Position numbers and translations under genes: made by a program | Part shown: positions 3,803 to 53,777 of the stretch, in pieces | Numbering within the stretch: position 1 is the first letter of the stretch | Layout of the letters: each line of letters opens with the position of its first letter | Notes under the pieces: generated by a model | The model's input: only the letters and a program-made list of their open reading frames with translations | Told to the model about the DNA's origin: nothing | The model's database searches: none | NCBI RefSeq assembly: GCF_032444005.1 | Contig: NC_091291.1 | Location: 139,686,001 to 139,750,000 of the forward strand | Origin: Ranitomeya imitator | Taxonomy: Eukaryota | Direction of reading: 5' to 3' | DNA: 64,000 nt

Positions 3803-4797
3803 TATAAATAGGCCACACAGGGATCGTTAGGTTAATGCATTGAGGCGGTAGGCCAGTCTGAACAAATGAGTTTTTAGGGCACGCTTAAAACTGTGGGGAT
3901 TGGGGATTAATCGTATTAACCTAGGTAGTGCATTCCAAAGAATCGGCGCAGCACGTGTAAAGTCTTGGAGACGGGAGTGGGAGGTTCTGATTATTGAGGA
4001 TGCTAACCTGAGGTCATTAGCGGAGCGGAGGGCACGGGTAGGGTGGTAGACTGATACCAGGGAGGAGATGTAGGGTGGTGCTGAGCCATGGAGTGCTTTG
4101 TGGATGAGGGTAGTAGTTTTGTACTGGATTCTGGAGTGGATGGGTAGCCAGTGTAATGACTGGCACAGGGTAGAGGCATCGGTGTAACGGTTGGTGAGGA
4201 ATATGATCCTGGCTGCAGCATTCAGGACAGATTGGAGCGGGGAGAGTTTTGCAAGAGGGAGACCGATTAGTAGAGAGTTACAATAGTCCAGACGAGAATG
4301 AATAAGTGAAACAGTAAGAGTTTTTGCAGAGTCGAAATTAAGAAAAGGGCGAATTCTAGAAATGTTTTTGAGATGCAGGTAAGAAGAGCGAGCCAGTGAT
4401 CGGATGTAGGGGGTGAATGAAAGCTCGGAATCAAGGATGACCCCAAGGCAGCGGGCATGTTGCTTTGGAGTAATGGTGGAACCGCACACGGAGATGGCAA
4501 TGTCAGGCAAAGGTAGGTTAGTAGAGGGAGAGAACACGAGGAGTTCAGTTTTTGACAGGTTTAGTTTCAGATAGAGGGAGGACATGATGTTAGAGACAGC
4601 GGTAAGACAATCACTGGTGTTTTCTAAAAAGGTCGGTGTGATATCGGGAGCAGAAGTGTATAATTGGGTGTCGTCAGCATAGAGATGGTACTGGAAACCA
4701 AATCTACTGATTGTTTGTCCAATAGGGGCAGTATACAACGAGAAGAGTAGGGGGCCTAGGACTGATCCTTGAGGAACCCCAACAGTAAGGGGAAGGT
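3410..4797 (-). mobile_element. 5'-truncated L2/CR1-clade LINE (RT C-terminal part plus 3' UTR)
   Basis: Open frame with [10 protein letters not shown] and [11 protein letters not shown] motifs to the stop at 3827, internal poly(A), (TTA)n tail at about 3410-3435. Confidence 0.92.
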
Positions 4798-5127
4798 GAT
4801 ATATATACTATATATCACTGTATACAGTGCTATATACCGTACATACACAGTACATTAGGACATCACCCAATATATGTTATACACACAGTGCGTCAGGTTA
4901 TATATAGGAGCTTCTCATAAAACTCGAAGATCATCAAAAAGTGGATTTATTTCAGTTGTTCAGTAAAACTCATTCTATAGAGTCATTACACACAGTGATC
5001 TATTCCACGTGTTCATTCCTGTTGATGATTACAGCCAATGAAAACCCAAAAGTCATTGTCTCAGTAAATTAGAATAATTAACAAAAAACACCTACAAAGG
5101 CTCCTAAGCGTTGATAAAGGTCCCTTA

Positions 5128-13904: not shown

Positions 13905-16802
13905 GGCCGGCGTCGCACTAGCGATTTTAAAGGACGTATGAGAGGCGCAGAAAATACGGATTGCATACGGTACAATGATTCTCTATGCCCCTGCTCCTAT
14001 CTGCCGTATTTTACTGATCCGTATTATACGGTCTTCTACGGCCGTAGAAAATCGCAGCATGCTGCATTTGTTACCGTATTGCGCAAAAAAAAGCCAATGA
14101 AAGTCTTTGGGGGCGAGAAAAATACAGATTACACACGGACCAGCAGTGTGACTTGCGAGAAATACGCAGCGGTGTTAGAGAGAAAAGCCGGCAATTCAGT
14201 GCGGTGTACAGTAAAATCACACTGACAGGTTAGAATAGAATAGGTAGAATAAATATGAACTTGAAAATGGGAACTTTTCAGAATATTTTCCCACGCTCGA
14301 GTTTATATGAGGACATCCAGCAGAGGGCGCATCACCGCGACTCGAGGTAACTACAGTACATTCCCCTGCATTCCATTCATTCACCAAGTTTTACAGGCAG
14401 GGGCACAGCTGCATTAGCAGAGCTCCTGGGTGTAAAATGATTTAACCCCTTCAGATGGATTTACATCGTGGGACGTGACAGAACAACGGAAGGTATGGAA
14501 TATTGTTGTTTGTTTTTTTTACCTTTGTTTCAGGTGACAAGGGTCTTCAGGTGGATTAAGAGTCTAATAAAATATTAAAACACCATGTGTCTTTATTTCA
14601 TTAAAATACTTTGTAATAATGTGTGTGTGTTTTATTAACCATTTCATACTATTGGATTAATAATGGATAGGTGTCATAATTGACGCCTCTCTATTATTAA
14701 TCTGGCTTAATGTCACCTTACAATAGCAAGGTGACATTAACCCTTCATTACCCCATATCCCACCGCTACACGGGAGTGGGAAGAGAGTGGCCAAGTGCCA
14801 GAATAGGCGCATCTTCCAGATGTGCCTTTTCTGGGGTGGCTGGGGGCAGATGTTTTTAGCCAGAGGGGGCCCAATAACCATGGACCCTCTCCAGGCTATT
14901 AATATCTGCCCTCAGTCACTGGCTTTACTACTCTGGCGGAGAAAATTGTGCGGGAGCCCACGCCAGTTTTTTCCGCGATTTAACCCTTTATTTTAACAGC
15001 TAGACAGCCCAAAATTTGCATAGACACACTACTGACATTAGTAGTGTGGAATATGCAAAAAAAAAATGGGGATATGAGATAGCTTACTGTATGTAAACCA
15101 GGTCTCATATCATGTCGGGTTTAGGAAGGAGATAGCAAAAGCCGGCAATTGAATTACCGGCTTTTCTGCTATCTTGCGCTATATATATATATATATATAT
15201 ACAGTGGGGCAAAAAAGTATTTAGTCAGTCAGCAATAGTGCAAGTTCCACCACTTAAAAAGATGAGAGGCGTCTGTAATTTACATCATAGGTAGACCTCA
15301 ACTATGGGAGACAAACTGAGAAAAAAAAATCCAGAAAATCACATTGTCTGTTTTTTTATCATTTTATTTGCATATTATGGTGGAAAATAAGTATTTGGTC
15401 AGAAACAAAATTTCATCTCAATACTTTGTAATATATCCTTTGTTGGCAAAGACAGAGGTCAAACGTTTTCTGTAAGTCTTCACAAGGTTGCCACACACTG
15501 TTGTTGGTATGTTGGCCCATTCCTCCATGCAGATCTCCTCTAGAGCAGTGATGTTTTTGGCTTTTCGCTTGGCAACACGGACTTTCAACTCCCTCCAAAG
15601 GTTTTCTATAGGGTTGAGATCTGGAGACTGGCTAGGCCACTCCAGGACCTTGAAATGCTTCTTACGAAGCCACTCCTTTGTTGCCCTGGCGGTGTGCTTT
15701 GGATCATTGTCATGTTGAAAGACCCAGCCACGTTTCATCTTCAATGCCCTTGCTGATGGAAGGAGGTTTGCACTCAAAATCTCACGATACATGGCCCCAT
15801 TCATTCTTTCATGTACCCGGATCAGTCGTCCTGGCCCCTTTGCAGAGAAACAGCCCCAAAGCATGATGTTTCCACCACCATGCTTTACAGTAGGTATGGT
15901 GTTTGATGGATGCAACTCAGTATTCTTTTTCCTCCAAACACGACAAGTTGTGTTTCTACCAAACAGTTCCAGTTTGGTTTCATCAGAGCATAGGACATTC
16001 TCCCAAAACTCCTCTGGATCATCCAAATGCTCTCTAGCAAACTTCAGACGGGCCTGGACATGTACTGGCTTAAGCAGTGGGACACGTCTGGCACTGCAGG
16101 ATCTGAGTCCATGGTGGCGTAGTGTGTTACTTATGGTAGGCCTTGTTACATTGGTCCCAGCTCTGCAGTTCATTCACTAGGTCCCCCCGCGTGGTTCTGG
16201 GATTTTTGCTCACCGTTCTTGTGATCATTCTGACCCCACGGGGTGGGATTTTGCGTGGAGCCCCAGATCAAGGGAGATTATCAGTGGTCTTGTATGTCTT
16301 CCATTTTCTAATTATTGCTCCCACTGTTGATTTCTTCACTCCAAGCTGGTTGGCTATTGCAGATTCAGTCTTCCCAGCCTGGTGCAGGGCTACAATTTTG
16401 TTTCTGGTGTCCTTTGACAGCTCTTTGGTCTTCACGATAGTGGAGTTTGGAGTCAGACTGTTTGAGGGTGTGCACAGGTGTCTTTTTATACTGATAACAA
16501 GTTTAAACAGGTGCCATTACTACAGGTAATGAGTGGAGGAAAGAGGAGACTCTTAAAGAAGAAGTTACAGGTCTGTGAGAGCCAGAAATCTTGATTGTTT
16601 GTTTCTGACCAAATACTTATTTTCCACCATAATATGCAAATAAAATGATAAAAAACCAGACAATGTGATTTTCTGGATTTTTTTTTCTCAGTTTGTCTCC
16701 CATAGTTGAGGTCTACCTATGATGTAAATTACAGACGCCTCTCATCTTTTTAAGTGGTGGAACTTGCACTATTGCTGACTGACTAAATACTTTTTTGCCC
16801 CA

Positions 16803-21665: not shown

Positions 21666-23714
21666 TGCAAAGTAAGTACACCAGCCTCATCAGGTAACTA
21701 TTTAACAACATATACATCTTGTATGGTGAAAACTGGTGGCAAATCCACTTTAATTCTGCATCTAATCAAAAGTGCGTACAAATGCTGGCGATCTTCCATC
21801 ACTTTCTGGGGGGCTGTGGAGGAACCCCCCTATTACTGCAGTATACACAGTGCAGCGAGGATGATATCCGTGCGTGGCCTCACAATGGGCAGGATCACAG
21901 GTATAATACTCACTGTGCGCGGCCGGGTGCATTCACCGGAGCTAATGATTACCTGTGCTGGAGGATACACAGGAGCGGAGAATAAATCATCACAACTCAA
22001 TATGTGACACTTGTCAGCAAGATTTCTCTATGAAACTAGTAATATGGCTGAATACAACGAGTAATTAGTGCGCGGGGACTCAAACATATTATTTGAGCAC
22101 GCCGAATTCACTCGGTTAGCACATGAGCATGCTCAAATAACACCTTATCCCAGCACATTCGCTCATCACCAGTAGTAATCTGATTAATGTACCAGTGCTG
22201 AGAAATCAACCTTTGAAGCCGAATGCAAATCAGCCTGGAAGTGCATTGGGGGCGTGTCACTACAATTTAAGTGCACATACACGCCCTAATTGCACTTCCA
22301 GCGTAAATTGTGGCTTCTGAGCTTGATTTCTCAGCACTTTTCAAAAACCTGACCGGCACATCCAAACATAGATTCAGTGTGAACAGGTGCTGAACCCAGA
22401 GTCGCCAACTCGTATATAGTTAAGTAAATAAGGCAGCACACTGCAGCGCTGACACATTGGATTAGTATCAGACCCCACCATGAAACAATACTAATCAGGG
22501 GCTCTTACATATCAAATATGTCTACAAGTTTAGTTTCCCTTTAAATAGTGGGATCAGTGATAAGGGCCCATATCTGGCAGCCATCGGCCGGAGTACTGGT
22601 TCTGTCCGCTACGCTCCAGTGCAGACTGGTTTAAAGACGCCGCTCCTTTATGTAGGAAGCACTTGAATCTGGATTTACTGGAAGCATTCACATAAAAAGT
22701 CACCCGATACCTGCGACACAGTAACCGGGGTGTGAGCGACGCTCCTGGGCTCCCATCCAAAATCTGGACCATGCAAAGCTTAGGGGCCCCTGGGACTCGT
22801 GTACAGATGCAGCGTCTGCCTCCCCCCATAGATAGACCCTGGGGGGCGACGGCTGCATTCTGCAGAGCAGTACGGACTGTCGTGTGAACGCGCCCTAAAC
22901 TCTCATTCACCTGGTGTTTTTTTCTTTGCATTTTTTTTTACCTGTGATGGTTTTTTAAATGCCAATTTTTACAGCTTTTTTTTTACCGCAGTTTTTACCC
23001 CACTGAGATCAAAATGGTTTAGCACCAAAACGCGTTTAATTTCCGCTGTGGTTTTCTGGACGCAGCCTTGGGGGGCTTTAAACCAAAAAAAATGCATCGA
23101 AAAGCCACAGTGAAGCCAGCGGCTGAAAAATTCATTATGAGACGCATACAGGCCCATGATTTCGCTCTTCTTTCTCCAACATAGGACAAAACAGACCCTA
23201 AATGATCGGATTCTAAAGAAAACACCAAAAAAAAAGGTAAGAAATGTGGGGGGAAAAAATTCAGAAAAAACAAAACAAAAAAAGTGTGTGTGAATGTAGC
23301 CCTAATGTCAGCCGCTATAGACATCAGCCAGGACACTGGACAGATTCGCAGTCATCAAGAACGGCGCCATTCACAGCAGCAAGCAGAGATGTCGCCAGCG
23401 GTGAGGAGCTGACACACAACTTATATTGGAAAGTTGCAGAACTTTTCATGCTGCAATGAAAACATGAAGTAAGTGGCCCCTCATATCTGCTGATCACAGG
23501 GGGCCCATCAGGCCGTACAGCAGAGGGGCAACATGGCGCCAACTTTGTGTAACACCCAGAAACAGCCTATAACGGTAAACGGATGTTATACAGGGGCTTC
23601 ACCCATCCTGGGGGGCTCGGGGAGCTGTACTTGGCGATCTCTGTCAGCTCCATAGAGAATGAATGGAGCCGAGATTTGCATGCTTGACCTGCGATCCATT
23701 CAGAAGGACCTGTT

Positions 23715-24150
23715 CTCAAGATCCCTGGTGGTCCCAGTCCTCAGACCCCTGGTGGTCCAAGTCCTCAGGCCCCTGGTGGTCCAAGTCCTCAGGCCCCTGG
23801 TGGTCCAAGTCCTCAGGCCCCCGGTGGTCCAAGTCCTCAGGCCCCTGGTGGTCCAAGTCCTCAGGCCCCTGGTGGTCCCAGTCCTCAGGCCCCTGGTGGT
23901 CCAAGTCCTCAGGCCCCTGGTGGTCCAAGTCCTCAGGCCCCTGGTGGTCCCAGTCCACAGACCCCTGGTGGTCCCAGTCCTCAGGCCCCTGGTGGACCAA
24001 GTCCTCAGGCCCCTGGTGGTCCCAGTCCTCAGACCCCTGGTGGTCCCAGTCCTCAGGCCCCTGGTGGTCCCAGTCCTCAGGCCCCTGGTGGTCCCAGTCC
24101 TCAGGCCCCTGGTGGTCCCAGTCCTCAGGCCCCTGGTGGTCCCAGTCCTC
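23715..24150 (+). repeat. 24-bp minisatellite, about 18 copies
   Basis: Unit CCCTGGTGGTCCCAGTCCTCAGGC. Confidence 0.95.
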
Positions 24151-24286
24151 AGCCTCCTGCATGTAATATCTCCTGTTATATGTATAGGCATAAGTTCATG
24201 TCAGCTCCTAGTTAGCACAGAGGGACCTCTTGTGGTCGGACTCAGGTACTGCATGTTCCCATACAGATAAAATGGTAAAACAATAA

Positions 24287-24725
24287 GGCCGGCGTCACAC
24301 TGGCGTTTAAAACGGCCGAGTGCAATGCGATAAAAAATCGCATTGCACTCGGACCAATGTTACCATATGGGGCAGCTCCCAGCAGCTGACTTTTTGTCGG
24401 CCGTTTTCCTCGGTCAGCATGCTGCGATTGTCTCGGACCGAGGAAAACTCTCGGCTCACTCGCACCCATATAAGCCTATGGGCTTAAGCCTATGGGACAG
24501 CGCACACCACTTGGATATCATCCGAGTGATGTGCGCTATAAGCGGACCCCAGCAATGGAGGAGATGGAGAAATTAATTTATCCGCCGCTGTGCTCCGATC
24601 CTCCCTGTGTGAGAGAATCGGAGCACAGACGCATGACACTCAGCTCCCGCTCTGCTTCGAGTGTCATTAGCATATCGCATCCTATGATCTCGCATCGGAT
24701 GCAATACGCCAGTGTGACGCCGGCC
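24287..24725. mobile_element. Harbinger-type MITE
   Basis: Perfect TIR GGCCGGCGTCACACT, TAA/TAA TSD, inverted homolog of 5553-6019. Confidence 0.88.
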
Positions 24726-25260
24726 TAAGTCGTATAATGTCAGTGACTGATCATCATCCCGTGTGCATCATATATATATCACACATGTATTATTGACTAT
24801 ATCACTGACTACATATCACACATGTATTACTGGCTCATAGTCTGTATCACAATCTGTCTTGTACCTCAACTATCAATCAGCAAAGACCCCGACCAGTAGG
24901 GGGCACTATGCACCTACCATAGGCAGCACTAGCAGCCATTTTTTCCAGAACTTGATGCACCCTTATCAATCTATATTAATATGTTTCACCTGCACTGACA
25001 CATTGTAGCAAACTATGACAACAGGGAGCAGCACCCGATTCCTCCAGCGGGAGGTGACTATTGCAAAACAATGGGGAGACAAAGCGCAGGACAGGGTCTT
25101 ATCCTCCTTACACCACATGTGCTCACCTGGTTAGGATGAGATTAGACAGATAGCGGCTGCTGCAGATCCACAGAAAATAACGTCTTCAAAGGGAGATTTG
25201 TAGTTACAGTTCTGCGCTGCCGCTAAGATGAATTTCAGGAGAGTAAAGTTGATTCACAGT

Positions 25261-25313
25261 GGTTTTATTCTACGCGTTTCAGGGGTCTCATGCCCCCTTC
25301 ATCAGGAAATACC
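25261..25313 (-). ncRNA. Minimal type I hammerhead ribozyme, Penelope-like-element type
   Basis: Minus strand reads GGUAUUUC-CUGAUGA-AGGGGGC AUGA GACCCCU-GAAA-CGCG-UA|GAAUAAAACC: complete core, helix II, palindromic helix III (ACGCGU), GUA cleavage triplet and imperfect helix I. Confidence 0.8.
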
Positions 25314-25344
25314 ACACAGAACATTCAGGCATCACAGGTATAAA

Positions 25345-25915
25345 TAGTTTCGCTAGGTTACAAAAAAAGGCACCATCAGGTCAGAAGACTCTGTGTCAAA
25401 GTTCAATGATAACAAACAATTAACAATTCAAACGATTAGAGAGGTATAAAATGAAAATACAATGACTTCTTATATATTTCTAGACAATAGTTGCAAATTT
25501 GCAACATTTAGGAGGTTGGGAGCTTGTTGGAGAAAATCAGACATGTATCTCTCATGTTGGGCTTGTTCTATTGGAATACACCGACCATCCTCCTCCTGCC
25601 GATCCTGTACTAGACCTACAAGGGTCAGTCGGATTCAGAATATCTCCCCACAGTCTCCGGACCTTGGACACTGTTTCCCTCAGGCTCCCCCACCCCCCAC
25701 TTCTCCCCCCCCCCACTTGCCCCCCCCCCCCTTCCCCTATCTCCCCCCCCACTTCCCCCATCTCCCACTTTTGTTAGTTCGCATGATTGCGTCTTAGCTA
25801 TTTACATGCATTACTGTACGGATTACATTTAAAGCTTTATTTTGATAGTTTTCTTATTATCTTATATATATAAATCGAAAATTTTCAATAAAAATTTATT
25901 GAGTAAAAAAAAAAA
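25345..25915 (+). mobile_element. Possible decayed 3' end of an L1-type LINE
   Basis: Ends in AATAAA (25887) followed by poly(A) at 25905-25915 after a C-rich tract. No clear ORF remains. Confidence 0.4.
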
Positions 25916-26149
25916 TCGCAGCAATGTCGCATCCTCCGCCTTTGTGACCTGGGGACTCTCCCGATTGTCACATGGCTTCTCCACATTTCTACACCCATCC
26001 TGGCTTACACGTATCCGGCAGAGCTAAAACAGCGAGGCTAGAACTTGCCCCACAGGCGACTCCTTAGCGGCCATTTTCCTGGAGTCTCTTCCCGCTTTGT
26101 TCTATGGACTGTCTTCACTAGAAGGAGACCGGAGGGCAGACTGTCTCTA

Positions 26150-26352
26150 TCGCTCTAGTGTTCGGCTGATTAGCATAGTGACGTCTCCCAGCCAATCAGG
26201 TGCAGGGGAGGGCGGGGTCTGCCGGTTTTGGGCGGGGCTGTGCTGGCGGCCGCTTCCTGTCCTTCACAGGCCGCTCAGGTGTCACAGACCGGGGATGGGC
26301 GCGGCGGCGGCGGCTGTGTGTCCGGGCACCGTGTGAGGCGAGAGCACCCGAG
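26150..26352 (+). promoter_or_regulatory. MFN2: MFN2 CpG-rich promoter and probable non-coding exon 1
   Basis: TGACGT at 26179, CCAAT 26192-26196, GC box GGGCGGGG 26210-26217, candidate donor AG|GTACTG at 26353. The TSS is not determinable from sequence. Confidence 0.7.
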
Positions 26353-27950
26353 GTACTGACACGTGATATATCGGGGGAGCTGTGATGTCACGATATCAGA
26401 CACAGACATGAGACTGAGTGCGGTTTCTGTGCGATAATATTGGACACTCCTTTACTCCGGCATCACCTGCTCCCAGTCCGGAGTATCGGGCGGGTCTAGG
26501 ACGATGCGCCGTTAATTTGTTTTTACTGTGAAATTGACCAAACCTTAGAAATGTCCCCGGGACAGATGACATTCTGCCGTAAATAAACGTCCTCTGACGG
26601 TGCCGGGTGTCGGGGTCACTGAGGGCTGTCGGTCCTGGTGGAGGGGCGCACGGTGCAGAGATCTGGGTCAGTGCGACCCTGTAAATGGGGGAGAGGGTCG
26701 CGAATGTCCCTCCCCCAGTACCAGAGACGCCACCAAGAATCCCCCCGTAATCCGGCATCTGATAGAGCAGAGCCCCGGCCTCCCACCACATTCCGTGCCC
26801 CCCATATACGGTGACGGCTGCGGCCACTGATCGGGGACCCTGGTGTCAGAACCGGACCCCACAGATCAGGGAGGACGTAATGCCCCCATATAACCCTGAG
26901 GGTCACCGTGCGGCCATAACTCCAGCCTGGGACCCTCCGTCTGTTGCGATCTCCAGCTCTGCAGGCTGGCTGGGCCTGCTGGGAGTTGTAGTTCCCCAGC
27001 AGCTGTAATAGATGTGCATCGGGCTCAGGGTTCATCACGATTTATGACCATGAAGGAGACGTCTCCTGGTGACGGGCGAGACACAGACCCCGCTGTGCCT
27101 ACGTATAGGCGCCCCCTCACACAGATACCCGGCCGGCGAGGTCTGTGAGCCGCTGAGGGGTCCGCTGGACCTATGGCTCCCTGCCAATACAATCATCGGG
27201 GGTCTGCAGCAGAAGTGACAGGACATGCTGAGAGTTGTGGTGCCACAGCAGCATGCTGCCTCTTCTGGTCTCCATGAGCGTGAACGTTGTTCATATAGGG
27301 GGGATAAAGGGGTCCCCCGTTGTAACAAACCTTCTGTATCTAGCACTTTCCAGCACATTTATTACGGACCCTCATTGTTTAAAGGGGCGATCTAGTGCCA
27401 TATCTTCTTTTCTGACAGACCCCCTGTATGTACATAAAATGAAAACACTATTTGTCTGCCGCCCCCCTCTGTACCTCTGCGGGGGTCTACGTGGATCTCC
27501 GAGCTTTCCCCTCCTGTGACCTTGTGTCCAATGCTGCAGCCAGTGATTAGCTGCAGTGGTCACAAGTACATACAGTGGGAATCAGTAGCTGGTGGGTTAT
27601 CGGATGACGCCACGGTCAGACACGCGGAGCTTTATTACCCCTGTAAGGAGCCGCGTGTGATCACTGCATGACCAAAGCCGGTGGAAGGTTCCTACTGAAT
27701 GACAGCAAGCAGAGATCCTGAAAGTCCTGATAGATTTATATCAAGTGTAACATTTACAGAGAATAACTTTAGTTTCTGGACTCTGAGCCCCATGGATACA
27801 TTGTGTTATAGTCAGAGACCCGGGAGGTCGCCCCCTGGTGGCAGGATCGCCATCATTTCCCATTAGAACTACCTGTCCCTCCTGTCGCTCCTCTTGTCCG
27901 CTGTTCTGTTTCCTGATACATTGTTTCACTCCGTCTACTTCTGCTGATAG

Positions 27951-28088: not shown

Positions 28089-37639
<9,551 letters not shown>

Positions 37640-52948: not shown

Positions 52949-53777
52949 TTTGACTTCCTTTTTTTTTTTTTTTCAGGATCTCTGCTTGCTGTCAGTGATC
53001 ACACGAAGTCTCGTCTTGTGTTATATATTTTGGGAGCTATTTAATTTTTTAGAGGTAAAGTATGTCACCCAGACATCATAGCTGATCGCCTGCTATAGGT
53101 CTGTACATCGCAGCGGCACTGACACATTGTAACAAACTGACACTGCACAGGCTGGTGCTGCTGATCTACGTCACTCATAGAGAAATGTGTCTGCATACAA
53201 ATGGACCAGTGTCAGGTCTGCACAAGCGTCGGCAAGAACCTTTCTATTCACAGACTGCAAGCAGAGATCTTTCAAATGATGAAGCCTTAAATTGGGAAGT
53301 TGTTAATTGATTTGCGCCATTGTTTTTGTTAACCCTTAGTCTATACGATGTTACACTGATGATGGTCATGTTTGATGATTTCTCATCTCGGCCCCGCGCA
53401 ATAACAGGACCTGAAGGTTAATCTCACCGCGGTCTCTCACAGTGGACGACATCTTCCAAAGGAAAGTCTGGAGCATGACCAAAAACAAACAGCTCCCCCC
53501 CAGTCAGCAGGCTGTGTCTGGTACTGCGGCGTCACTAGGGGCTACATAATATGTGACTGTTAATCTACATCTCTGTGTTTTCTACACTTCGTGCTGAATG
53601 TTATATTTTGATATTTGATTGTGAGAATTTCTATATTTTTACATTTGAAATTAAGAATAATGTACAAAAGTTCTGGCGATTTTTCAAAAATATCAGAAAT
53701 GTCAAGTGAAACGAGCTGATTTGTTTCCCTGTGGACGGGCGCGTGTCCGAGTCACTCTGCTGTGGGTGCTCAGCACG

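What the first reader, a model, noticed from the sequence alone, without database searches (positions are those of the whole stretch)
25261..25313. Intact hammerhead ribozyme core on the antisense strand just upstream of the MFN2 promoter
Seen: the minus strand reads 5'-GGUAUUUC CUGAUGA AGGGGGC-AUGA-GACCCCU GAAA CGCG UA|GAAUAAAACC-3'. All conserved hammerhead core nucleotides are present. Helix II has 6 of 7 pairs with an R-Y closing pair, the cleavage triplet is GUA (cut between 25271 and 25270) and helix I is imperfect. Helix III is too short to fold alone but is a perfect palindrome (ACGCGU). Established: minimal type I hammerheads with palindromic helix III are typical of Penelope-like retroelement terminal repeats and can act as dimers. 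Inference: this is a solo Penelope-type terminal-repeat remnant, and no RT or GIY-YIG ORF is in the window. It sits in the path of a divergent transcript from the MFN2 promoter about 0.9 kb away, and the cut site is 1 nt before an AAUAAA. It could therefore end or process upstream-antisense RNA, with a partner copy supplied in trans.
Basis: partly seen in the sequence, partly recalled or inferred. Interest (0 to 1): 0.75.

Follow-up and report, generated by a model that had tools for sequence, protein, structure and literature searches.

The report
Solo frog retroelement hammerhead copy
The self-cutting "hammerhead" RNA motif is really there, but it is one lone copy of a very abundant frog mobile element that happens to sit 0.9 kb upstream of the mitofusin-2 gene; nothing shows it does anything for that gene, so it is ordinary.

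Summary
All hammerhead core bases are present. The cut site is 25271|25270, helix III is the palindrome ACGCGU, and an AAUAAA starts 1 nt after the cut.

The motif is not a chance match. My full descriptor hits 0.005 times per shuffled window, and never with a palindromic helix III. Public DNA contigs of this frog and of a relative pile up about 3,000-fold over single-copy depth on 25172-25333. So the motif lies in the core of a dispersed repeat about 0.5 kb long. No second copy, tandem unit or adjacent coding remnant exists. An RT fragment does exist 20 kb away.

The architecture is the published amphibian "canonical type I" hammerhead of retrozymes, which are relatives of Penelope terminal repeats. 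It is not the "minimal" Penelope type. No Rfam hammerhead model matches it.

The proposed role in ending MFN2 upstream-antisense RNA has no support. There is no partner copy, and two AAUAAA signals lie nearer the promoter. No RNA contig covers the unique flanks.

The scan has already noted many such hammerheads in this genome, solo copies included. Interest is low.

The parts
25258..25316 (-). Complete type I hammerhead motif. Helix I is GUGGU-AU-UUC / GAA-UAAA-ACCAC. Core is CUGAUGA. Helix II is AGGGG(GCAUGAGA)CCCCU. Then GAA, and helix III A(CGCG)U followed by A17.
   Evidence: Sequence read; descriptor hit; folds.
25270..25271 (-). Predicted cleavage site, between A17 (25271) and G1.1 (25270).
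   Evidence: Index arithmetic. Cleavage itself was not tested.
25272..25277 (-). Palindrome ACGCGU. It forms a 1-bp helix III with a tetraloop in the monomer and a 6-bp intermolecular helix III in a homodimer.
   Evidence: cofold gives -29.5 kcal/mol against 2 x -10.3 for two monomers, with the 6-bp helix formed between the two strands.
25172..25333 (-). Most highly repeated core of the dispersed repeat, containing the hammerhead.
   Evidence: summed contig depth is 27,805 and 34,224 in X1 (31,272 and 24,270 in the relative X11), against about 9 on single-copy sequence. Several paralogous contigs end at 25313.
24929..25576 (-). Full extent of the pile-up at 80% likeness, the outer limits of the repeat copy. 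The shoulder at 24929-25100 may belong to a neighbouring repeat.
   Evidence: depth table. A unique X1 contig, 24702-25084, has 0 differences. The 23-nt string at 24992-25014 recurs at 53116.
25109..25586 (-). Candidate insert of 478 bp, non-coding, 39.7% G+C, if the flanking 8-mers are a target-site duplication.
   Evidence: No minus-strand ORF of 25 aa or more inside it. The boundary is only a candidate.
25101..25108 (.). Left copy of the 8-mer ATCCTCCT (possible target-site duplication).
   Evidence: the only direct repeat of 8 nt or more between the two edges. About 0.9 are expected by chance, so it is not significant.
25587..25594 (.). Right copy of the 8-mer ATCCTCCT. It coincides with the fall to single-copy depth.
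   Evidence: bin 25577-25657 has depth 8.3.
26190..26352 (+). Context only, not part of the element: CCAAT box, GC boxes and a CpG-rich block ending at a GT donor. This is the putative MFN2 promoter and non-coding first exon. The start codon (MSLLF...) is at 28089.

Best explanation
This is a genuine hammerhead ribozyme motif of the amphibian type I kind. It has a single-pair helix III capped by a palindromic tetraloop, so it is competent only when two copies pair. It lies in the conserved core of an abundant, non-coding, dispersed retroelement family of this poison frog and a relative. That family belongs to the lineage of Penelope-like terminal repeats and the non-LTR retrozymes derived from them.

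The copy in the window is a lone, roughly single-unit insertion of about 0.5 kb. It landed 0.9 kb upstream of the mitofusin-2 promoter, in antisense orientation.

In the element's own life cycle the ribozyme cuts multimeric or read-through transcripts to unit length. Neighbouring copies pair through ACGCGU to build an extended helix III. This mechanism is inferred from the literature, not shown here.

At this locus there is no neighbouring copy. The motif is most likely inert and has no role in MFN2 expression. Whether the copy came from a 5'-truncated Penelope element or from a retrozyme monomer is left open.
For: The sequence and complete core are shown. Chance is excluded at window level (0.005 loose hits per shuffled window; 0 of 400 shuffles with a palindromic helix III). 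In one search the motif lies at the peak of a pile-up: depth 34,224 against about 9 single-copy in X1, with the same pattern in the relative X11. A known TIR element in the same stretch serves as the positive control. No listed position inside 25261-25313 differs from the family majority, whereas flanking positions do (25171, 25181, 25207, 25246, 25325, 25392, 25415). In one search the homodimer forms a 6-bp ACGCGU helix III. [quoted passage not shown] Monomer copies of such elements are dispersed evenly along Xenopus chromosomes, and most Penelope insertions are 5'-truncated with a single terminal repeat (bioRxiv 10.64898/2026.07.22.740005). The same ACGCGU/GUA|GAA arrangement recurs in unrelated animal hammerheads from metagenome contigs, with different but paired helices I and II. 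The copy is non-coding and has low G+C (39.7%). There is no second copy in the window.
Against: No Rfam hammerhead covariance model reports the motif, even on 101 nt at E<=10. The pair closing helix II is A-U rather than the usual G-C. From my own knowledge this may weaken catalysis, and it may explain the model miss. No direct sequence homology to a named Penelope element or retrozyme consensus could be tested, because no frog genome or repeat library is available here. The 478-nt candidate unit folds no better than shuffles (z = +0.69), unlike the compact circRNAs described for retrozymes. Only 1 of 9 Xenopus dimer constructs cleaved in vitro, so activity cannot be assumed. All read evidence comes from contigs, not raw reads, so strand, RNA ends and expression level could not be seen.
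Confidence: 0.8

Rival explanations
1. The solo hammerhead, paired in trans with transcripts of other family copies, cleaves MFN2 upstream-antisense RNA at 25271|25270. Together with the adjacent AAUAAA, it helps terminate or process that RNA.
For: The motif is intact and matches the family majority. It is on the strand an upstream-antisense transcript would carry, 0.9 kb from a CpG-island promoter. Family members appear in contigs of putative RNA runs, so trans partners could exist (X7 record 30 and X14 record 24).
Against: No partner copy lies within 64 kb. Trans dimerisation through 6 bp at cellular RNA concentrations is unlikely (inference). Two minus-strand AATAAA hexamers, at 25900 and 25841, are met first by any antisense transcript. 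The AAUAAA beside the cut is part of the ribozyme's own helix I and internal loop, and no listed difference separates it from the family majority. No putative RNA contig lies on the unique flanks 25577-25657 or 25982-26300. Amphibian hammerheads of this kind cleave poorly as monomers.
Confidence: 0.04
2. The repeat is real, but the hammerhead-like string in it is a coincidental look-alike that never cleaves. It would be a motif match, not a ribozyme.
For: No Rfam hammerhead model matches. The 10.1-11.1 pair is A-U. The monomer fold energy is unremarkable (z = -1.14). Eight of nine predicted Xenopus retrozyme dimers did not cleave in vitro.
Against: My analytic extrapolation gives about 0.0004 descriptor hits with a palindromic helix III per 64-kb window. 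The motif reproduces feature by feature the published amphibian architecture. It sits in the best-conserved, most repeated part of the element. Hammerhead-bearing repeats are reported in all seven amphibian genomes sampled.
Confidence: 0.08
3. This locus is itself a live source element. It would be transcribed from its own promoter, producing unit-length linear or circular RNA that is retrotransposed.
For: The copy is close to the family majority, with about 4 listed differences in the 162-nt core, and both CpGs of helix III are intact.
Against: A single unit has only one cleavage site and no dimer partner, so it cannot release a unit-length RNA. The paralogous contigs in the putative RNA runs differ from this copy or run on into unlike sequence. 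There is a 5-nt deletion relative to the majority at 25146/7.
Confidence: 0.04

Closest known systems
Amphibian canonical type I hammerhead of non-LTR retrozymes / newt satellite-2 (HHR_Amex1 of axolotl; Cervera & de la Pena 2020, PMC7229834)
   Same: Type I topology with a full conserved core. [quoted passage not shown] Helix I has an internal loop opposite loop 2. The host element is non-coding, low in G+C, a few hundred bp long and present in very high copy number.
   Different: This is a lone copy, not a tandem array. The base of helix II is A-U instead of G-C. Direct sequence similarity to the axolotl or Xenopus families was not tested. The candidate unit shows no excess secondary structure. 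No Rfam model matches.
Minimal hammerheads (min-HHR) in the terminal repeats (pLTR) of Penelope-like elements (Cervera & de la Pena 2014, PMC4209133)
   Same: A type I hammerhead carried by a retroelement, thought to work as a dimer. Most genomic copies are single motifs from truncated elements. Some Penelope variants in flies, rotifers, shrimps and mosquitoes also have a small palindromic helix III.
   Different: The min-HHR as defined has no helix III or loop 3, a 7-8 bp helix II with a bulged 5' base, and a 4-5 bp helix I. This motif has a 1-bp helix III with a tetraloop, a 5-bp helix II and a 3+5 bp helix I. No RT/GIY-YIG ORF and no second terminal repeat lie nearby.
Dispersed monomer derivatives of vertebrate non-LTR retrozymes (Li, Clavereau & Pollet 2026, bioRxiv 10.64898/2026.07.22.740005)
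   Same: Single-unit copies scattered through the genome, mostly intergenic, related to Penelope pLTRs. They are regarded as dead-end offspring of active arrays.
   Different: That work covered Xenopus and other sampled vertebrates. I could not check whether a dendrobatid frog or this family was included.
Conserved intronic hammerheads of amniotes (Rfam HH9/HH10), proposed to act in mRNA biogenesis
   Different: Those are single-copy, deeply conserved, monomer-competent motifs that match their Rfam models. This one is a member of a high-copy repeat, depends on a dimer, and matches no model.

Membership tests
Hammerhead ribozyme, type I | Conserved core nucleotides C3 U4 G5 A6 N7 G8 A9, G12 A13 A14, A15.1-U16.1, and H17 at the cleavage site | tested here: met
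   sequence; descriptor. H17 is A at 25271.
Hammerhead ribozyme, type I | Helix II stem-loop between A9 and G12 | tested here: met
   5 bp AGGGG/CCCCU with an 8-nt loop. The closing pair is A-U, not the usual G-C.
Hammerhead ribozyme, type I | Open-ended helix I formed by the sequences flanking the core and the cleavage site | tested here: met
   3 bp, an internal loop, then 5 bp over 25316-25306 / 25270-25258. Present in the MFE and centroid folds.
Hammerhead ribozyme, type I | Helix III closing the core | tested here: inconclusive
   The monomer has only A15.1-U16.1 over a tetraloop, which is energetically unfavourable (-2.6 against -8.0 kcal/mol without it). A homodimer forms 6 bp. This is adequate only in the dimeric format.
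Hammerhead ribozyme, type I | Match to a curated covariance model (Rfam hammerhead families) | tested here: not met
   No hammerhead family listed at gathering score or at E<=10 on 601 nt and 101 nt.
Hammerhead ribozyme, type I | Site-specific self-cleavage | not testable with these tools
   Needs in vitro transcription of monomer and dimer constructs.
Amphibian non-LTR retrozyme (satellite-2 type) | Hammerhead with single-pair helix III capped by a palindromic tetraloop | tested here: met
   A(CGCG)U. Definition taken from PMC7229834.
Amphibian non-LTR retrozyme (satellite-2 type) | Head-to-tail tandem units, each with a hammerhead | tested here: not met
   No second motif and no direct repeat of the flanks in the window. 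At best this is a monomer derivative.
Amphibian non-LTR retrozyme (satellite-2 type) | High-copy, non-coding unit of a few hundred bp with low G+C | tested here: met
   Pile-up. No ORF. G+C is 39.7% over 478 bp.
Amphibian non-LTR retrozyme (satellite-2 type) | Expression as linear and circular unit-length RNA | not testable with these tools
   Only contigs of runs guessed to be RNA were available. They cannot show circles, ends or strand.
Penelope-like element terminal repeat (pLTR) | Adjacent ORF with RT and GIY-YIG endonuclease, or remnants of it | tested here: not met
   No ORF of 25 aa or more on the minus strand inside the copy. The only RVT_1 hit is 20 kb away, at 3830-4807.
Penelope-like element terminal repeat (pLTR) | Second direct terminal repeat carrying the same hammerhead | tested here: not met
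   A single repeat is expected for 5'-truncated insertions, so this does not exclude Penelope origin.
Penelope-like element terminal repeat (pLTR) | Min-HHR architecture (no helix III or loop 3, helix II 7-8 bp, helix I 4-5 bp) | tested here: not met
   Compared with the definition in PMC4209133. This motif has the canonical architecture instead.
Penelope-like element terminal repeat (pLTR) | Sequence homology to a named Penelope consensus (Neptune, Poseidon and others) | not testable with these tools
   No repeat library or frog genome is searchable here.

The most novel reading that the evidence does not exclude
A lone dimer-dependent hammerhead, left by a retroelement 0.9 kb upstream of a housekeeping promoter, has been co-opted. 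It would pair in trans with abundant family transcripts and cleave MFN2 upstream-antisense RNA, one nucleotide before a poly(A) signal. That would be a ribozyme-based route to ending promoter-upstream transcripts.
Probability: 0.03. Interest if true: 0.6.

Novelty: new member of a known kind. Interest (0 to 1): 0.13.

Why it matters
It matters little beyond annotation. The finding shows that an intact-looking hammerhead near a promoter in a frog genome is most simply a stray copy of a hammerhead-bearing retroelement, of which this genome holds thousands. It also gives a useful caution for the scan. These amphibian motifs escape Rfam's hammerhead models, so a descriptor search plus a repeat-depth check identifies them better than Infernal with Rfam does. 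If the small-probability co-option reading were true, it would be a new way of terminating promoter-upstream transcripts.

Tried and rejected
1. Rfam scans at three scales gave no hammerhead hit. I read this as insensitivity of the models to a one-pair helix III and an A-U 10.1-11.1 pair, not as evidence against the motif. I could not see the sub-threshold scores.

2. A look-up of earlier findings by sequence was blank.

3. A specific metagenome pattern scan found nothing. A looser one gave 46 loci. Ten of 31 distinct matches are good hammerheads sharing ACGCGU, with different helices I and II.

4. I then tested whether those loci carry Penelope ORFs. They hold only a few long ORFs on the hammerhead strand, and none has RT or GIY-YIG. 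This first-hand test of the Penelope link was uninformative.

5. Target-site duplication: the only candidate is an 8-mer at chance expectation.

6. Fold of the 478-nt candidate unit: no excess structure (z = +0.69), so a viroid-like retrozyme RNA gets no support from folding.

7. The RT fragment at 3830-4807 has no relative among solved structures.

I mapped the exons by reading open segments by reference and by one PDB comparison. A first PDB query with the exon at 34381-34515 found nothing.

10. Sequencing runs were available only as contigs.

Full report
**Observation**

Counting along it puts A17 at 25271 and G1.1 at 25270, so the stated cut site is right. AAUAAA occupies 25269-25264, one base after the cut.

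Every conserved hammerhead core base is present: CUGAUGA, GAA, A15.1/U16.1 and H17 = A.
- Helix II is AGGGG/CCCCU with an 8-nt loop. Its closing pair is A-U.
- Helix III is a single A-U pair over a CGCG tetraloop, which makes the palindrome ACGCGU.
With three more bases on each side it forms UUC/GAA, an internal loop (AU opposite UAAA) and GUGGU/ACCAC, spanning 25316-25258. It appears in both the minimum-energy and centroid folds.

**Is it more than chance?**

This site is the only match of a full type-I descriptor written for this check, on either strand of the window. The descriptor requires helix I of at least 3 bp, CUGANGA, helix II of at least 4 bp, GAAA, a short helix III closed by A15.1-U16.1, and H17. 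In 400 dinucleotide-preserving shuffles it hit 0.005 times per window, and never with a palindromic helix III.

No Rfam 15 hammerhead family reports the site. That holds at gathering score on the whole window and at E<=10 on 601 nt or on 101 nt. I take this as a limit of those models for a one-pair helix III and an A-U 10.1-11.1 pair. It still stands as a membership test that was not met.

**What it belongs to**

No second copy of the motif or its flanks exists in the window. I laid public contigs on 24200-26600 at 80% likeness. The runs were two DNA runs (the species, and a relative labelled as another organism) and two runs guessed to be RNA.

| Stretch | Summed contig depth, species run X1 |
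|---|---|
| Single-copy sequence | about 9 |
| TIR-flanked element 24286-24726 (positive control) | 35,000-168,000 |
| 24929-25009 | 173 |
| 25010-25090 | 1,092 |
| 25091-25171 | 2,674 |
| 25172-25252 | 27,805 |
| 25253-25333 (holds the hammerhead) | 34,224 |
| 25334-25414 | 3,466 |
| 25415-25495 | 1,378 |
| 25496-25576 | 193 |
| from 25577 | single-copy again |

The relative shows the same profile. The hammerhead therefore sits in the most repeated, best-conserved part of an abundant dispersed repeat shared by both frogs.

This copy departs from the family majority at 25171, 25181, 25207, 25246, 25325, 25392 and 25415, and by a 5-nt deletion at 25146/7. None of the listed differences falls inside the motif, although 75 rows of that table were not shown.

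The copy is non-coding. No minus-strand ORF of 25 aa or more lies inside it, and its G+C is 39.7%. The only terminal direct repeat is an 8-mer, ATCCTCCT, at 25101 and 25587. That is what chance predicts. Its right copy coincides with the return to single-copy depth, so 25109-25586 (478 bp) is a candidate insert. The shoulder below 25100 may belong to a neighbouring repeat whose 23-nt end recurs at 53116.

**Comparison with what is known**

- Cervera and de la Pena 2014 (PMC4209133) describe the "canonical" metazoan type I hammerhead as having a 1-2 bp helix III capped by a 2-4 nt palindromic loop. Such a ribozyme cleaves only when two copies pair. They define the Penelope "min-HHR" differently: no helix III or loop 3, a helix II of 7-8 bp and a helix I of 4-5 bp.
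- Their 2020 paper (PMC7229834) places the canonical type in non-LTR retrozymes. [quoted passage not shown] That is the arrangement seen here.
- The cofold of two copies forms the 6-bp ACGCGU helix, at -29.5 kcal/mol against 2 x -10.3 for two monomers.
- A 2026 preprint (bioRxiv 10.64898/2026.07.22.740005) reports several relevant points. Vertebrate retrozymes are related to Penelope terminal repeats. Monomer copies are scattered evenly along Xenopus chromosomes. Most Penelope insertions are 5'-truncated with a single terminal repeat. Only one of nine Xenopus dimer constructs cleaved in vitro.

The motif, however, is the canonical amphibian kind rather than the minimal Penelope kind. Penelope identity was not shown here, and activity cannot be assumed.

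As independent material, a pattern scan of metagenome contigs returned 46 loci. Ten of 31 distinct matches are good hammerheads with the same ACGCGU/GUA|GAA segment, but with different, paired helices I and II. None sits next to an RT or GIY-YIG ORF, so they neither support nor refute the Penelope link.

**Gene context**

Reading plus-strand open segments by reference shows the following mitofusin exons:
- the start-codon exon (MSLLF...) from 28089;
- an exon ending ...KVAFFGR near 29502;
- an exon holding [14 protein letters not shown]... near 29700;
- further exons near 30.5, 30.9, 31.1 and 34.2-34.5 kb.

The exon near 29.7 kb matches human mitofusin-2 best among solved structures (101.6 bits, against 94.2 for mitofusin-1). 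A CCAAT box, GC boxes and a CpG-rich block lie at 26190-26352 and end at a GT donor.

An RVT_1 fragment lies at 3830-4807 on the minus strand. At 20 kb away it is unrelated to this copy.

**The proposed local function**

Nothing supports a role in ending or processing upstream-antisense RNA.
- The ribozyme needs a partner, and none lies within 64 kb.
- Two minus-strand AATAAA hexamers, at 25900 and 25841, are nearer the promoter than the one beside the cut site.
- That AAUAAA is part of the ribozyme's own helix I and internal loop. No listed difference separates it from the family majority, so it looks inherited with the element rather than evolved here.
- In the two putative RNA runs, the contigs touching the motif are paralogues. 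One runs on into unlike sequence beyond 25313, and the other has 6 differences and 22 gaps. None lies on the unique flanks 25577-25657 or 25982-26300.

Because only contigs were available, strand, RNA ends and expression level could not be examined. This is absence of evidence, not proof of silence.

**Other checks**

The 478-nt candidate unit folds no better than shuffled sequence (z = +0.69), so folding gives no support for a compact retrozyme-like RNA.

**Earlier notes of this scan**

These were used as leads only. They report hundreds of hammerhead-bearing Penelope-like and retrozyme repeats in this same poison-frog genome, including solo single-unit copies judged ordinary. This agrees with my independent reading.

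**Verdict**

The motif is real and not a chance match. It is a lone copy of a known kind of frog mobile element, most likely inert where it sits. Confidence is 0.8.

Noticed in passing
window 24286-24726: A 441-bp element with 21-nt perfect terminal inverted repeats (AGGCCGGCGTCACACTGGCGT). It is extremely abundant in DNA contigs of both frogs (depth up to about 168,000) and is present in contigs of the putative RNA runs. It is MITE-like.
   Followed up: partly
window 23627-24250: A 24-bp minisatellite of about 18 or more units (CCCCTGGTGGTCC[A/C]AGTCCTCAGG), just upstream of the TIR element.
   Followed up: no
window 28247-28998: A 46-bp tandem array of at least 11 units, starting right after the MFN2 start-codon exon.
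   Followed up: no
window 3830-4807 (-): An open frame of 326 aa with the C-terminal half of an RVT_1 reverse-transcriptase domain (E = 1.5e-13). It has no relative among solved structures and was not typed as LINE or Penelope.
   Followed up: partly
window 15421-16173 (-): A Tc1/mariner-type transposase fragment (DDE_3 and HTH_Tnp_Tc3_2 domains).
   Followed up: no
window 25671-25774: A C-rich low-complexity tract whose contig pile-up is about 40 times higher in the species run (22,002) than in the relative (530).
   Followed up: no
window 25206-25318: One contig of the relative species, at single-copy-like depth (19.6), joins 25206 to 25318 with one A between. It skips the 111 nt that hold the whole hammerhead. 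It could be an orthologue without that segment or a paralogue. This is unexplained.
   Followed up: no
window 29502 / about 29700: An intron splits the MFN2 GTPase P-loop codons: one exon ends ...KVAFFGR and the next open segment holds RTSNGKST. This is why a simple P-loop motif search found nothing.
   Followed up: yes
window 24992-25014 and 53116-53138: A 23-nt string recurs with one mismatch (none expected by chance). It is probably the end of another dispersed repeat that abuts the hammerhead element.
   Followed up: partly
L034 (motifs at 2225, 2469, 9769, 11384); L018 (19, 643, 5239): Metagenome contigs, apparently animal DNA, carry several hammerhead-like motifs on one strand. They share the same ACGCGU helix III but have other helices I and II. 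No RT/GIY-YIG ORF was found beside them.
   Followed up: partly
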